A stretch of DNA of 63,972 nt, the filler included, from Ministeria vibrans ATCC 50519 (taxonomy: Eukaryota; Protista; Filasterea): NCBI GenBank assembly GCA_943704425.1. It is 16 parts of 16 records of this genome, joined end to end, with 100 filler letters (N's around TTAATTAATTAA, not from the genome) between each part and the next. Parts side by side here need not be neighbours in the genome. Positions count along the whole stretch, not along the records: positions 57,969 to 62,870 come from CALSCP010002164.1; 15 more parts are not named here. One strand, 5' to 3'. Each line of letters opens with the position of its first letter. The stretch's first letter is position 1. The notes beneath the pieces were generated by a model, which was not told the DNA's origin, did not search any database, and saw only the letters and a list, made by a program, of their open reading frames with translations. Below are positions 57,529-62,870 of the stretch, piece by piece. The position numbers were made by a program, and so were the translations under genes.

Positions 57529-58015
57529 AACAAATTATTGTGAGAGTGAATTCACTTATTTCACACTCACTGAATTGTGATCTGAATTAAGTGAATTCTG
57601 ATTTTCAATTACTTGCTCTGATCGCAGCTCAGCCATGGGTTCTCTGGCTATTGGCATTTTAAAACATACAGTACACACGACATAGGTCAGAGTGGTGACC
57701 GATAAAGCCAATTTTGTCTACAATCTCCCTCTCTCTCTCACAGCGAAACATTAGTTGATCAGACCTGATCGCCAATTGTTGAACTCATTTATATTGTGAT
57801 GTCTTCTGACGCTCTCCGGTTCAGCGGCCACGAGTGCCTGCGCACGGTACGCCCTCCCGCCCGCCCCCNNNNNNNNNNNNNNNNNNNNNNNNNNNNNNNN
57901 NNNNNNNNNNNNTTAATTAATTAANNNNNNNNNNNNNNNNNNNNNNNNNNNNNNNNNNNNNNNNNNNNCCCCCCCCCGTCTGGAACGTTAAGCAGGATAT
58001 CAGAAATGAACTTAC

Positions 58016-58531
58016 AAAAGTATCAAAGGCCAAGGGCTGATTGAATAACATTGTTTCTGCAAACATGAATGCCATGTCAATGACACCCTAAAAACGAGGG
58101 ACGGATTTTAGATACTTAGTGGCGCAACACGATTGAAAAAAAAAACACGGTGCTATGCCGAGCACAAAATTATTTGTGTACCGTGGTATCCCAGTCTGAA
58201 AGATTTCCGCGATGATCGATGCCACTCGACTGAAACATGGCACGAAGACTTGTGGTTCCGGCAAGATTGAGCGTGTCTTGTGCGGTAATTACAAAGTTAA
58301 CGCAGCCATGAAAGTATCCTCCCTCCAGATGATTTCCCACTCGAGCTGAGCCCCACTGTTGCACTTCGCGAATCAAAAGTTTGTCTCCGGTATTTGCAAA
58401 TCGAAACCCAACAAAAGTTCCGAGAATCTGCGCAATCATAATTAAATTTTGATGAGTTAAAAGATCCTCAAAAAACCACCAGATTTAGCACATGAAAAAA
58501 TAATAAGAAAAGAATAATAAAAAATATAAAA

Positions 58532-58565
<34 letters not shown>

Positions 58566-59006
58566 TTATTATTATTATTTATTATGATGATTATATTTTT
58601 GTTATTGTAATAGTTATGATTCTTATGACAATTATGATTCCTATGATTATACTATAATAATTCTTCTGACCGTTATTGTGTAGGTTCCTGCCACAGCGTA
58701 AGTGTGAGTGCGTTTTGGTGAGTCATAGCTTGTGATGGTGTCAGCCAGGCTGCCATCGCCCCAGCTGACAGAAAACGCATACACTCCAGTGTCCATCAAA
58801 GGTAATGTAACAGTACTAAACGCGCTATCGGTCTGCCATAAAGTCACGAAAGCTGCCGGTCGCTCGCAATTGTCCCCAATGAATTCGTTCGTGCACACAC
58901 AAGAGTAGAAGTTAACTGAGAACAAGTGAGTCAGTAGGTCATTGGAAAAAAGCGGGAAAGGCGAGTTTTCTTGCAAAGCACGATTAATGATACTAATATT
59001 CAAACG

Positions 59007-59043
<37 letters not shown>

Positions 59044-59094
59044 AAGTTATTATAATAATTATTATTAGTAAACTGTTATTATTAATAATAATAA

Positions 59095-59143
<49 letters not shown>

Positions 59144-60479
59144 TATAATGATAATAATAATAATAATTATAATGATAAGAATAAGAGACGAAATGGTAAT
59201 AATAATAATTAACTATTACCATCAACATAAATAATTAATATGGGTTAATGGCCTTTTTTCGAGACAGTGTACGGCGAAAGAATTGTTCTACTCGCTGTTT
59301 TGCATTTTAGCTCTCTAATTCAATCCTCTTGACAATAACAATTTGAATGTGTTCAGCATGAGCAAGCCACGCATGCACACTTTCAAGTGCATGGCGTGGT
59401 TTTGAGGACATGCGCCATTTTTTATGACTGGAATATTAAAACGATAAGAAGAAGAATAAAATTCTTAATAAGAAAAAAATTAATAGAGAATAGACAGCGA
59501 ACTCAATGTCAAAACAAGACAATATACAAAACAAGCAGCACAATACTTCCGACGTTGACACAATATTAGAAAAAGAATATAATATTAAGAGAAGAACAAG
59601 AAGAAGAATACAACCCATTTTTAATGGAAGAAGTAAACATTTCTAATTTATTATCAATCACAATTATTATCAATCACAAACGATAAGCGATGACACAAAC
59701 AGCTCAACGTCACTTAATATGAATTAGAAGAACACAACCCATTATTAAAATTAATTAGATTAAAATTAAGTAAAATTAAGTAGAAGAAGAAGTGCAACCC
59801 ATTATTCAAAAGTCTCGTTTTTTTTACCTGATACTTCGGAGCAACTTCCCCCATTTTCACACGGCGATGAAGCACATTCAGAAAGGTCCATAGTGCAATC
59901 TGCTCCAGTATATCCCATAGCACAGACGCAGGTGTAGGAACCTAGGTTGTCTTGGCATACGCCACTATTTTGACAGGGCGCGGACGCACACTCGTTGATA
60001 TCAGTTTCACAAAAAACGCCAGTATGTCCGAGTGCGCAAATACATGTGAAGTTTCCGGCTTTGTTGTTACACAGACCTCCATTGCCACAGGGTGACGATT
60101 TGCACTCATCCACGTCCTCTTCACACAGCATGCCGCTGTATCCAGACGTGCACATGCAGAGGAATTCTTGACCATTGTCGTAGCATTTTCCGCCATTCTG
60201 GCATGGTTGCGATTCGCAGGCCTCACCGAGGGTAACGACAATCTGCTCTAGATACGAAATACGATCTTGCAGCTGCTGGACCAAAGAAGACATTTTGGGG
60301 TCGGTGAGGACTTTCGCTCCATTTATAAAAATATCGCTTGATGAGTGAACAGAGCAGTTGGCGGCAGGCAAAAGCACGATATCGCCGTCACTGTTGTAGA
60401 TGGCGGTATCACTTGGTGTCGAGGCACCAAATGCTGCAAGAAAGAACGCGGCGAGAACGACAACGATTGCGAACTTCAT
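58016..60479 (-). CDS. Secreted chimeric protein: cubilin-like head + coiled coil + 4 EGF + PKD + BspA/DUF285 surface repeats (3' partial)
   Basis: Exons ~60479-59829, 58915-58671, 58428-58182 and 58088-58017 join via GT-AG in frame: ..NCERPAAFVTLWQT..SVSWGDG..THTYAVAGTYTIT|ILG..DKLLIREVQQWG..FHGCVNF..SLRAMF..LSDWDTT|GVIDMAFMFAE..FNQPL. Confidence 0.82.
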
Positions 60480-60534
60480 GAGCAAAAAACGAGTGAAAGT
60501 CAAAACCCAACCCCCACCCATTTTAAACTATTAA

Positions 60535-62660
60535 CTAACCCACCCATTTCAAATCCTTGCAAACCTTTTTTTCGCTCATGTCGCTCATGTCGCTCCACTC
60601 TTCGTTCTCTCTATTCTCGCCAAGCTCAACTAGCGTGCTCAGTTCGCTTTTTGGACACGTCTTTTTGTAATGTCCAAGCTGGCCGCAAGTCTGGCATAGG
60701 CGCCCGCCGCGGCTCTTGGTTTTGCCCTCATCGCCTGCGTCACCCGTCGGCGGATTGGGCGCAGCCGATGCGGGGGTTGCAGGTGTCGTTGAGGTGGTTG
60801 TAGTTGTACTGTTGATATAGTTGTAGTTGTTGCGGAGCTGCTCTGCTTTTTGTTGATCTTGCCCAGCATGGCAAGAAAAATTTGCTTGGACGTGAGCTTC
60901 ACCGGCGCCGAGCGCTCCACAGTGTTGACGAGATTCGGCGTCTGGACAATGTAGAAAAGGTACCTCCACCGTGATCCACAGCGGCGCCTTGATGTTGGGC
61001 GCCGCTCGCAGGTTGCTGGTCGGCGGCACGGACATCGCAATGTTTCGGAGGCGCACGCAGCTGTTGACTCGGGAAAGACAGTCGAGAACTCGTCGCCGCA
61101 GCGGAGCCCAAAAGTTTTGACAACCCAAATCACGTGAGTGCACGGGAGAATGTCGACTGCGTTGCGGCCGCACGAGCACCAAGACAACCGCGGTGTGGCC
61201 TCAGCCAGATCCACTTCAATCGTGCGCCTCGGGCAGTCGTGGCTGGTGACGTGAACGCGCTCGTTGTCCAGCTGCATGAGTCGGAGGTTGCTGGCACCCC
61301 ATAGCGCACGGCCGTTGTACTCCTTGTTCATTACAGCTGACGCCAAGAAGTTGCGCGGCCGAACGATTTCGCTTGGTCAATGCGTGCCGCAGCGTCCTCC
61401 ACCAACCTTCGCACCGTTTCGAGTGGCCAGCCCTGCCGCTTCTCCTCGCTGGCAGCAGCAAACACAGTCTCAGCGTCGTTGCTCGTTGTGTTGCCGAATG
61501 GATTGAAGCGTTTTCCAATCACGCTCGCAGCCCACTCTCTCGTCGGATGACCATCGGTGATGTACTTGTAGCTCTTCTTGCTCAGTCGCTGGATAGCAGC
61601 CATCGCGTCCTCGAACACGAGCGTGTCTGGGGTGTTGGCAGCGACCTCGAAGTGCTGCATGATGACGGTCCGATCCGCCTTGGTCACATCGACGCAACCC
61701 GCAAAGATTGCACTTGAAGTGGATTGATTACAAATGATCTTGATGCCGCCGTGGTGCCGTGTGAACTGCACATGCGCTTCCATGGTCTCGAGCACCCGCT
61801 TCGCCTCCTCAGCGCTCTCCTTCTCCACCACAGCGACAGCGACCAACACTCGCGACTGCGAGAACGTGCGCGCAGTGACGACGGCTAAGCTCCCGATGCA
61901 AGACGTTGTCGCCGCCGGACGTCCCATGTATCGGCGTTTGTTCACCGTGTTCCCATTCTCGTCTGTTGCCGGGTGCTTCCGCTGGCCACCGTTTTTGCCG
62001 GCACGGCTCGCCGCAAGGCGCGTGTCGACTTTGTCTTCGTCTTTGCCACCACTCTCGTTCTCCTCGTCGTCTTCCTCCGCATCATCGTCACGTCCATGTC
62101 CCGCGCCAGCATGCCCGTAGGCGCCGTCAATGTGAGCATGAAGAAACGATTCGACGCTGCGGACGCGTCTGCCGAGATATCCGAAGTCAATGCAGACAAT
62201 GTCGCTGATGAAGCCGCTGCTCAGCATTCGGATAGTCGATCCAGGGCCGGAACGTGGCGCAGCCATCTGCACCCGCCTCGTACATGCCCAAGTTGAGAGT
62301 GACGGTCTTGTTGAAGGCTTCGATGTAGGCACAGAGAGCGCCCCACGGCTCAGCGTGCGTGGTCGCCGCGAAATTTGGTGGAAGCGACAGTAACGCCGCG
62401 ACGCAGCACCGCTGCGAGCCTTCGTTGCATTGGTGGGTTTGCCGGAAAGCGTCGTACCGAACGGGCAGCGTTGGCCACGGCGCTGACCAACAGCGACGGG
62501 TTGCGGCGGACGTTGCTGCGGTTGACGAGTGGGTCGCATGTGTGGACGAGGTTGGAGTAGAGGACGACGAATTCGCTGCCTCGGGCGCGTGCACGTACGT
62601 GGAAAGTGCAGCCGGCTTCGGGCACGTGCGTAGACTCCTTAGAACGTGCACCGACACCGC
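60535..62660 (-). mobile_element. Degenerate Mutator/MULE transposase (frameshifted)
   Basis: In order: MuDR-type DNA-binding finger GCTFHVRAR..F.V..HTC; CIDFGY (first D); AVAVVEKESAE; IICNQ (second D read as N); TTSNDAETVF (E); SWIM CSCG..ILPCTHVI; zinc knuckle CQTCGQLGHYKKTC, spread over several frames. Confidence 0.85.
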
Positions 62661-62669
62661 CGGGCGCAA

Positions 62670-62870
62670 CACACCTTTTCATCGTGCTGATGGATCGAAT
62701 GGAGAAGCCACCGTTGCCGACGACGCCGCCGTCCGAGGAACGTGTCGTCTTGGGGTTCCCGCCCATGTCCCATGGGGCGCCCAAATAGTCATATTGCATG
62801 TACTCATCGATGCCGGGGCGGAGCAACAGGCAGTCGGTGTGCAGAAAGAGAATGTGATCGCGCACCACCG
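62670..62870 (-). CDS. DUF5672-type (putative glycosyltransferase) fragment, intronless, 5' cut by the contig end
   Basis: HILFLHTDCLL..IDEYMQYDYLGAPW..VGNGGFSIRS signature. Confidence 0.7.

What the first reader, a model, noticed from the sequence alone, without database searches (positions are those of the whole stretch)
58016..60479. Animal-type EGF/cubilin-like protein fused to a bacterial PKD + BspA (DUF285) surface-protein body, with spliceosomal introns
Seen: signal peptide, short beta-type head, coiled coil (SSLVQQLQDRISYLEQ) and 4 EGFs. The fourth EGF runs, inside one exon, straight into AFVTLWQT..VSWGDG..THTY..AGTYTIT..DKL..VQQWG..F.GC.NF..MF..LSDWDT..V.DM.FMF..FNQPL. Knowledge: that order of motifs is the usual PKD + 26-residue repeat architecture of BspA-type/DUF285 surface proteins of Bacteroidota and mollicutes. 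Inference: a bacterial adhesin domain was acquired horizontally, gained at least 3 introns and was joined to eukaryotic EGF modules. The introns and the within-exon junction argue against contamination.
Basis: partly seen in the sequence, partly recalled or inferred. Interest (0 to 1): 0.8.

Follow-up and report, generated by a model that had tools for sequence, protein, structure and literature searches.

The report
Protist secreted EGF–DUF285 repeat protein gene
This is a real, intron-bearing eukaryotic gene for a secreted protein that joins Notch-type EGF modules to a PKD-like + DUF285 (BspA-type) repeat body, but it belongs to an older eukaryotic gene family and DUF285 proteins were already known in marine microalgae, so it is not a fresh bacterial gene capture.

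Summary
On the minus strand (60479 to 58016) there is one gene with four in-frame exons and canonical GT-AG introns. It is cut at its 3' end by the contig edge. It encodes a signal peptide, a short head, an amphipathic helix and four EGF modules (Pfam EGF 6.5e-22). Then come a PKD-like beta-sandwich (below Pfam threshold) and the N-terminal cap plus first repeats of a DUF285/BspA-type repeat domain. The cap exon matches 2664 proteins, and every top hit scanned carries DUF285.

Two other marine metagenome contigs carry the same gene layout with introns at the same positions. At least nine intron-less EGF+PKD+DUF285 genes sit on compact contigs in another metagenome, and two of the three contigs whose neighbours were scanned carry eukaryote-type neighbour genes. 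The nearest prokaryotic or viral relatives are only 40-56 % identical, and they include Asgard and DPANN archaea, Bacteroidota and phage-like contigs. Synonymous sites between family copies are saturated.

DUF285 in marine microalgae, and its horizontal spread, has been published since 2010. The likely history is an old transfer, then fusion to EGF modules and expansion within eukaryotes. The likely role is an extracellular binding or adhesion protein. The source organism was not identified. Modest interest.

The parts
60423..60479 (-). Start codon and predicted signal peptide (19 hydrophobic residues ending in a small-residue cleavage motif)
   Evidence: Translation. The N-termini of L001 and P0051 are equivalent. 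No signal-peptide predictor was available, so this is read from the sequence.
60300..60422 (-). Short head region (residues 20-60), conserved in the two intron-bearing relatives
   Evidence: Alignment A3. Invariant positions include N41, S43, V44, I50, G54, V57 and T59. No Pfam family matched.
60225..60299 (-). Amphipathic heptad-like helix (residues 61-85) just before the EGFs; a possible oligomerisation helix
   Evidence: The hydrophobic spacing is conserved in L001 and L003. A helix occupies the equivalent place (residues 44-61) in the AlphaFold model of P0051, but at low confidence. That it forms a coiled coil is inference.
59828..60218 (-). EGF modules 1-3 and the N-terminal half of EGF 4 (end of exon 1; the exon ends in phase 1)
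   Evidence: Pfam EGF 6.5e-22 in 4 stretches; EGF_CA 4.4e-11. Best solved relatives are Delta-like 1 (1.3e-68) and Notch1.
58916..59827 (-). Intron 1 (912 nt, GT..AG, 26 % GC, holds a (TAA)n microsatellite)
   Evidence: L001 and L003 have an intron at the same position and phase in their last EGF.
58863..58915 (-). C-terminal half of EGF 4 (start of exon 2)
   Evidence: It completes the six-cysteine pattern begun in exon 1.
58671..58862 (-). PKD-like beta-sandwich module (rest of exon 2)
   Evidence: PKD_4 18.6 bits and PKD 17.0 bits, both below cut-off. It aligns at 41-43 % identity with both sandwich modules of P0051. Those modules reach the PF00801 cut-off (27.0 bits) and fold as a beta-sandwich with pLDDT above 90.
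58428..58670 (-). Intron 2 (243 nt, GT..AG, 17 % GC, holds an (AAT)n array)
   Evidence: L001 and L003 have an intron at the same position and phase 0.
58182..58427 (-). Exon 3: N-terminal cap and first repeats of the DUF285/BspA-type repeat domain (82 residues)
   Evidence: phmmer found 2664 proteins at E<=1e-3 and 632 at E<=1e-10. The hits scanned carry DUF285 at up to 1523 bits directly after this module. ESM Atlas top clusters are DUF285/BspA, score 0.94. No direct Pfam hit.
58088..58181 (-). Intron 3 (94 nt, GT..AG)
   Evidence: L001 and L003 have an intron at the same position.
58016..58087 (-). Exon 4: one 24-residue DUF285 repeat encoded as its own 72-nt exon
   Evidence: DUF285 13.6 bits, below cut-off. 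L001 has three successive repeat exons of this kind, two of them complete 72-nt exons with phase-0 introns at the same point.
57969..58015 (-). Start of intron 4 (GTAAGT donor) running into the contig end; the gene is cut at its 3' end
   Evidence: The contig ends in a C run, which is probably an assembly or sequencing artefact.

Best explanation
The locus is a functional gene of an intron-rich, still unidentified eukaryote, probably a marine protist. It belongs to a multigene family of secreted proteins built as: signal peptide, short head, amphipathic helix, 2-8 Notch-type (partly calcium-binding) EGF modules, PKD-like beta-sandwich, DUF285 (BspA-type, leucine-rich-repeat-like) solenoid.

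The sandwich + DUF285 unit is shared with thousands of bacterial, archaeal and viral surface proteins. It most likely entered eukaryotes by an old horizontal transfer. It was then fused to EGF modules. In this lineage it acquired or retained introns at module boundaries, to the point that single repeats are single 72-nt exons.

Inferred mechanism, not shown: the protein is exported. The helix may oligomerise it. The EGF stalk holds the DUF285 solenoid away from the cell, and the solenoid's variable face binds a ligand (cell-cell, cell-surface, or microbe/virus recognition).
For: Gene structure and coding state:
- Intact frame across four exons with GT-AG introns.
- Strong EGF hits.
- The cap exon hits 2664 proteins, and all of the scanned hits of 500 residues or more carry DUF285; the Atlas agrees.

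Relatives:
- L001 and L003, from an ENA marine metagenome, have the same layout at 55-66 % identity in exons 2 and 3. Their introns lie at identical positions and phases, all GT-AG where both ends are on the contig.
- Where computable, dN/dS is 0.12-0.21 with dS above 1.5, which indicates purifying selection and old divergence.
- At least nine intron-less EGF+DUF285 proteins come from JGI sample 3300071654. Three of their contigs are compact, and two have eukaryote-type neighbours: a DEP domain with poly-Q, and a GT7 galactosyltransferase.
- The EGF-to-sandwich junction aligns residue for residue with P0051.

Phylogeny:
- Tree of the cap module: the window, L001 and L003 form a clade (98), and the JGI family forms a clade (97).
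- A tree holding all these eukaryote-assigned rows together is not rejected (p-AU 0.855). It even scored 44.8 log-likelihood units better than the short free search.

Literature:
- DUF285 is multi-copy in bacteria, giant viruses and eukaryotic phytoplankton, and is highly transcribed in diatoms (PMC11992049).
- Its horizontal distribution among bacteria, prasinophytes and a diatom was described earlier (PMC2996958).
- It is in flux between Aureococcus and its giant virus (bioRxiv 10.1101/2024.10.30.620910).
Against: - No transcript evidence; the splicing is inferred.
- The gene is truncated, so repeat number and C-terminus (anchor or not) are unknown.
- Pfam PKD and DUF285 are below threshold on the single exons. 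I did not score the joined protein.
- The cap-module tree (81 columns) has an unresolved backbone. The free tree did not join the two eukaryotic groups, so the EGF fusion could have arisen twice.
- The eukaryotic nature of the JGI contigs rests on two neighbour domains.
- The source organism is unknown.
- Function is entirely inferred from architecture.
Confidence: 0.7

Rival explanations
1. One reading: a recent, lineage-specific capture of a bacterial (Bacteroidota or mollicute) BspA adhesin gene that then gained introns and was joined to host EGF exons in this genome.
For: The PKD-like + DUF285 unit is very common in Bacteroidota surface proteins. Exon GC is 39-50 % against 17-39 % in the introns, which shows the introns are a distinct component.
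Against: - The best prokaryotic or viral identity is only 40-56 %.
- The closest named relatives are as often archaeal as bacterial.
- The same fusion with the same intron positions occurs in two other contigs, with saturated dS.
- The fusion also occurs in an intron-poor eukaryote.
Confidence: 0.07
2. The DUF285 body reached this lineage through a giant virus, or is exchanged repeatedly between host and virus, rather than coming directly from a prokaryote.
For: DUF285 genes are multi-copy in the Aureococcus giant virus and are reported in flux between host and virus (PMC5917014; bioRxiv 10.1101/2024.10.30.620910). The single best non-family match to exon 3 lies on an IMG/VR viral contig (56 %).
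Against: That best viral contig (L018) looks like a phage of bacteria: it has FISUMP-type repeats and PT linkers and no EGF. No viral hit carried EGF modules. Viral rows do not group with the window clade in the tree.
Confidence: 0.15
3. The two EGF-bearing eukaryotic groups (the window lineage and JGI 3300071654) fused EGF modules to DUF285 independently. EGF is a mobile module, so the shared layout would be convergence.
For: The free tree does not place the two groups together. The head regions upstream of the EGFs show no detectable sequence similarity.
Against: Both groups have the same order of parts and the same direct junction from the last EGF cysteine into the first sandwich strand. 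Monophyly is not rejected, and the constrained tree scored better.
Confidence: 0.2
4. Assembly chimera, contamination or a dead pseudogene.
For: The contig is short with an artefactual poly-C end. A decayed transposon-like region lies directly upstream.
Against: The junction lies within one exon. The frame is intact over 404 complete codons plus the split codon. Where computable, dN/dS is 0.12-0.21. The same architecture appears in independent assemblies.
Confidence: 0.03

Closest known systems
DUF285 / BspA-family leucine-rich repeat surface proteins (Pfam PF03382; 'PARCEL' repeats of Roske et al. 2010, PMC2996958)
   Same: It has the same cap module and the same roughly 24-26-residue repeat with the MF..A..FNQ...W/F-D-x-S-x-V motif. 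A PKD-like sandwich precedes the solenoid, as in many prokaryotic members. The protein is secreted.
   Different: It is fused to N-terminal Notch-type EGF modules and is encoded in pieces with spliceosomal introns, one repeat per exon. Its repeat is 24 residues, against 25 in P0051. Pfam thresholds are not reached on the separate exons.
DUF285 proteins of eukaryotic phytoplankton and giant viruses (diatoms, Ostreococcus/Micromonas, pelagophytes, AaV)
   Same: These are eukaryotic or viral DUF285 genes in marine microbes, multi-copy and thought to be horizontally exchanged (PMC2996958; PMC11992049; bioRxiv 10.1101/2024.10.30.620910).
   Different: None of the papers found describes an EGF fusion or an exon-per-repeat structure. 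I could not fetch named diatom or prasinophyte sequences to place them in the tree.
Intron-less EGF+PKD+DUF285 'surface proteins' of JGI metagenome 3300071654 (P0051, P0160, P0161, P0175, P0214, P0219, P0231, P0236, P0257)
   Same: Most of them share the same order of parts and the same EGF-to-sandwich junction. Identity is 41-51 % in the sandwich and cap.
   Different: They have no introns and a different head sequence. Some carry two sandwich+DUF285 units, and EGF number varies from 2 to about 8. P0175 and P0231 have a longer, different N-terminal region before the EGFs.
Animal matricellular proteins with an N-terminal oligomerising helix followed by EGF repeats (tenascin, COMP/thrombospondin) - an analogy drawn from my own knowledge
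   Same: Signal peptide, short heptad helix, an EGF stalk, then a C-terminal binding domain.
   Different: There is no homology outside the EGFs. The C-terminal domain here is a DUF285 solenoid. Oligomerisation was not tested.

Membership tests
EGF / calcium-binding EGF (PF00008, PF07645) | Six-cysteine EGF pattern scoring above the Pfam gathering cut-off | tested here: met
   PF00008 77.9 bits (cut-off 21.5), 4 stretches; PF07645 43.3 bits (cut-off 27). Delta-like 1 at 1.3e-68.
Cubilin-like | CUB domains following the EGF modules | tested here: not met
   No CUB hit in any exon. The EGFs are followed by the PKD-like module.
PKD domain (PF00801 / PF18911) | Score above the Pfam gathering cut-off | tested here: not met
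   17.0 bits against a cut-off of 23.5, and 18.6 bits against 27. Only the WGDG..THTY..GxYTV half matches.
PKD domain (PF00801 / PF18911) | Ig-like beta-sandwich fold at this position | tested here: inconclusive
   Shown only by proxy. The homologous module of P0051 passes PF00801 (27.0 bits) and is modelled as an all-beta module with pLDDT above 90. The window's own module was not folded.
DUF285 / BspA-type repeat (PF03382) | Score above the Pfam gathering cut-off (25 bits) | tested here: inconclusive
   13.6 bits, on exon 4 alone. Only one full repeat lies on the contig and the exons were not joined, so the test cannot be completed here.
DUF285 / BspA-type repeat (PF03382) | Homology of the flanking cap module to that of bona fide DUF285 proteins | tested here: met
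   2664 hits at E<=1e-3. The hits of 500 residues or more that were scanned (P0002, P0012, P0019, P0051, P0054, P0057, P0071, P0160, P0214) carry PF03382 at 102-1523 bits right after the module. Atlas score 0.94.
DUF285 / BspA-type repeat (PF03382) | Tandem repeats of about 25 residues with the MF..A..FNQ motif | tested here: met
   One complete repeat in exon 4 and a degenerate one at the end of exon 3. The relative L001 has three in a row.
Spliceosomal-intron-bearing eukaryotic gene | GT-AG borders that restore one reading frame, conserved in relatives | tested here: met
Spliceosomal-intron-bearing eukaryotic gene | Spliced transcripts | not testable with these tools
   No transcript data for the source organism could be reached.
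Recent prokaryote-to-eukaryote horizontal transfer | The eukaryotic sequence nests with support inside a donor clade at high identity | tested here: not met
   Maximum identity is 56 % (viral contig) and 48 % (Promethearchaeota). The window clade stands alone on a 0.74 branch, and the backbone is unresolved.

The most novel reading that the evidence does not exclude
A single old transfer of a prokaryotic or viral PKD-like+DUF285 surface module into a marine eukaryote was fused to Notch-type EGF modules. This founded a family of secreted stalk-and-solenoid proteins now shared by at least two eukaryotic lineages. In the intron-rich lineage the repeats were then cut into, or multiplied as, one-repeat exons. 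If so, the family is a clean natural example of intron gain and exon-based repeat expansion in a gene of foreign origin. It is also a candidate recognition receptor for bacteria or viruses at the surface of marine protists.
Probability: 0.35. Interest if true: 0.55.

Novelty: new variant of a known kind. Interest (0 to 1): 0.35.

Why it matters
DUF285 is among the most transcribed domains of unknown function in ocean diatoms (PMC11992049), and its role is unknown. An architecture that puts it at the tip of a secreted, EGF-stalked protein argues for extracellular ligand binding. That gives a concrete construct to test.

The one-repeat-per-exon structure, with positions conserved between copies, also offers a datable case of how a gene of prokaryotic type becomes a typical eukaryotic mosaic gene. 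It is not evidence for a recent or unusual cross-domain transfer.

Tried and rejected
- Word-index search with exon 3 found nothing, and with the exon 2 ORF only one weak PKD fragment. The length filter makes these blanks uninformative.
- The sample accession of L001 and L003 appears in no paper held.
- Two scans of JGI metagenome contigs gave nothing closer than 43 %. The window's lineage is poorly sampled there.
- An Atlas search with the neighbouring DUF5672 ORF returned only bacterial and phage clusters and did not identify the organism.
- Foldseek of the P0051 model against the PDB returned only EGF matches (Notch, Delta). No solved structure matched the DUF285 solenoid.
- The sigma-70 promoter scan hits are an effect of the AT-rich introns and mean nothing here.
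- I considered vertical descent from Asgard archaea, because several of the closest named hits are Asgard. I judge it unlikely given the patchy eukaryotic distribution, though it is not excluded.
- I did not build or search a joined (spliced) protein, so there is no whole-protein Pfam score and no fold of the window's own product.

Full report
WHAT IS THERE

The piece 57969-62870 carries a four-exon gene fragment on the minus strand.

- Exon 1 (60479-59828) starts at an ATG. It encodes a 19-residue hydrophobic signal peptide and a head of about 40 residues. A 25-residue amphipathic helix follows, then EGF modules 1-3 and the first half of EGF 4. It ends in phase 1 at a GT donor.
- Intron 1 is 912 nt, 26 % GC, and contains a (TAA)59 array.
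- Exon 2 (58915-58671) completes the split codon and EGF 4. It runs without interruption into a 64-residue module with the WGDG...THTY...GTYTIT signature.
- Intron 2 is 243 nt and 17 % GC.
- Exon 3 (58427-58182) is 82 codons.
- Intron 3 is 94 nt.
- Exon 4 (58087-58016) is a single 24-residue repeat.
- A GTAAGT donor follows, and the contig ends 47 nt later in a C run.

All complete introns are GT..AG and the frame is continuous. I never built the joined protein, so no whole-protein score exists.

DOMAINS

- EGF is unambiguous: PF00008 at 6.5e-22 in four stretches and calcium-binding EGF at 4.4e-11. The closest solved relatives are Delta-like 1 (1.3e-68) and Notch EGF repeats. There is no CUB domain, so 'cubilin-like' is not supported.
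- The next module is only PKD-like here: 17-18.6 bits, below the cut-offs. It aligns at 41-43 % identity with the sandwich modules of the homologue P0051. Those modules reach the PF00801 cut-off and are modelled as a confident all-beta module.
- Exon 3 has no Pfam hit. An exhaustive phmmer search, however, found 2664 proteins at E<=1e-3 and 632 at E<=1e-10.
- All nine hits of 500 residues or more that I scanned carry DUF285 at 102-1523 bits immediately after the matched module. They often also have PKD, fn3 or an inverse-autotransporter beta-domain.
- Exon 3 is therefore the N-terminal cap and first turns of a DUF285 solenoid. The Pfam model starts further in. The ESM Atlas gives the same answer (0.94).
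- Exon 4 is one canonical repeat (DUF285 13.6 bits).

RELATIVES WITH THE SAME GENE STRUCTURE

Two short hits, P0103 (71 %) and P0093 (61 %), led to contigs L001 and L003 of one ENA marine metagenome assembly.

- Both contigs encode the head, the helix, EGFs (three in L001, two in L003), the sandwich, the cap and DUF285 repeats; L001, which is complete at its 5' end, also has the signal peptide.
- Exons 2 and 3 are 55-66 % identical to the window and exon 1 is 41-45 % identical.
- Introns lie at the same four kinds of position and in the same phases. These are: inside the last EGF (phase 1), after the sandwich, after the cap, and after every repeat.
- In L001, three successive repeats each lie in their own exon; the two that are complete are 72 nt long.
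- Synonymous sites between the copies are saturated (dS above 1.5 or not computable) while dN is about 0.3. Where a ratio can be computed it is 0.12-0.21. These are old, selected copies.

A SECOND EUKARYOTIC GROUP WITHOUT INTRONS

- P0051 (620 residues, one uninterrupted ORF) has a signal peptide, head, helix and two EGFs, then two sandwich+DUF285 units.
- Using P0051 as query found eight more EGF+DUF285 proteins from JGI. P0051 and the three of these whose contigs I looked up all come from sample 3300071654.
- Their contigs are gene-dense with genes on both strands. Neighbours include a DEP-domain protein with poly-Q tracts and a GT7-type galactosyltransferase. This points to an intron-poor eukaryote, but the assignment rests on those two domains.
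- The junction from the last EGF cysteine into the first sandwich strand aligns with the window's.

PROKARYOTIC AND VIRAL RELATIVES

- Named hits include Aquimarina, Flavobacterium, Saprospiraceae, gammaproteobacterial sponge symbionts, Woesearchaeota and Nanoarchaeia.
- Asgard archaea (Promethearchaeota, Heimdallarchaeota, Thorarchaeota) appear repeatedly.
- The best unlabelled domain-level hit, P0071, lies next to a thermosome-type chaperonin gene.
- IMG/VR contigs reach 56 % identity. The best one is phage-like and has no EGF.

No donor can be named.

TREE

- A maximum-likelihood tree of the cap module (108 rows, 81 columns) groups the window with L001 and L003 (support 98). It also groups the JGI family (97). 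The backbone is unresolved.
- A tree constrained to keep all eukaryote-assigned rows together is not rejected (p-AU 0.855). It had a log-likelihood 44.8 higher than the short free search.
- This is compatible with a single eukaryotic origin of the fusion but does not prove it.

WHAT IS ALREADY KNOWN

- The DUF285/'PARCEL' repeat was described in 2010 as horizontally distributed among bacteria, prasinophyte green algae and a diatom (PMC2996958).
- It is the only DUF among the top 100 transcribed Pfam families in ocean diatoms, and is noted as multi-copy in bacteria, giant viruses and eukaryotic phytoplankton (PMC11992049).
- It is abundant in the Aureococcus giant virus and exchanged with the host (PMC5917014; bioRxiv 10.1101/2024.10.30.620910).
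- A search for papers naming both DUF285 and EGF found nothing about such a fusion.

VERDICT

What appears new is the EGF-stalked architecture and the one-repeat-per-exon structure. The most likely function is an exported binding or adhesion protein. That is inferred from the architecture only.

The organism remains unidentified.

Noticed in passing
window 60535-62539 (-): Three overlapping minus-strand ORFs in different frames, 57-62 % GC. One has a weak SWIM zinc finger hit (16.6 bits) and one a CCHC zinc knuckle (21.1 bits). The 402-residue ORF has no significant Pfam hit. It looks like a decayed or intron-bearing MULE/FAR1-type transposase remnant, ending only 56 nt upstream of the EGF gene's ATG.
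   Followed up: partly
window 62350-62868 (-): An ORF with a DUF5672 domain (1.2e-13), cut by the contig end and overlapping the 402-residue ORF in another frame. The Atlas neighbours are bacterial and phage DUF5672 clusters.
   Followed up: partly
window 58499-58563 and 59007-59184: Long AAT/TAA microsatellites inside introns 2 and 1. Intron GC is 17-26 % against 48-50 % in exons 1-3, a very sharp exon/intron contrast in composition.
   Followed up: yes
window 57969-57977: The contig begins with a run of nine C, probably a sequencing or assembly end artefact.
   Followed up: no
L007, L008; P0013, P0096, P0162, P0168, P0169, P0237, P0251: Asgard archaea (Promethearchaeota, Heimdallarchaeota, Thorarchaeota) are prominent among the closest named carriers of the sandwich+DUF285 unit, at 41-48 % identity. 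Whether this reflects sampling, ecology or history was not examined.
   Followed up: partly
L018 21-2261 (+): A protein on an IMG/VR contig combines Fibrobacter-type paralogous repeats, PT-rich linkers, a PKD-like module and DUF285. It is the best non-family match to exon 3 (56 %).
   Followed up: partly
L002, L037, L038, L039 (JGI 3300071654): An unidentified gene-dense eukaryote-like genome (L002 reads at roughly 57 % GC; the others were not measured) with at least nine EGF+DUF285 paralogues. Many of its neighbouring genes have no Pfam hit.
   Followed up: partly
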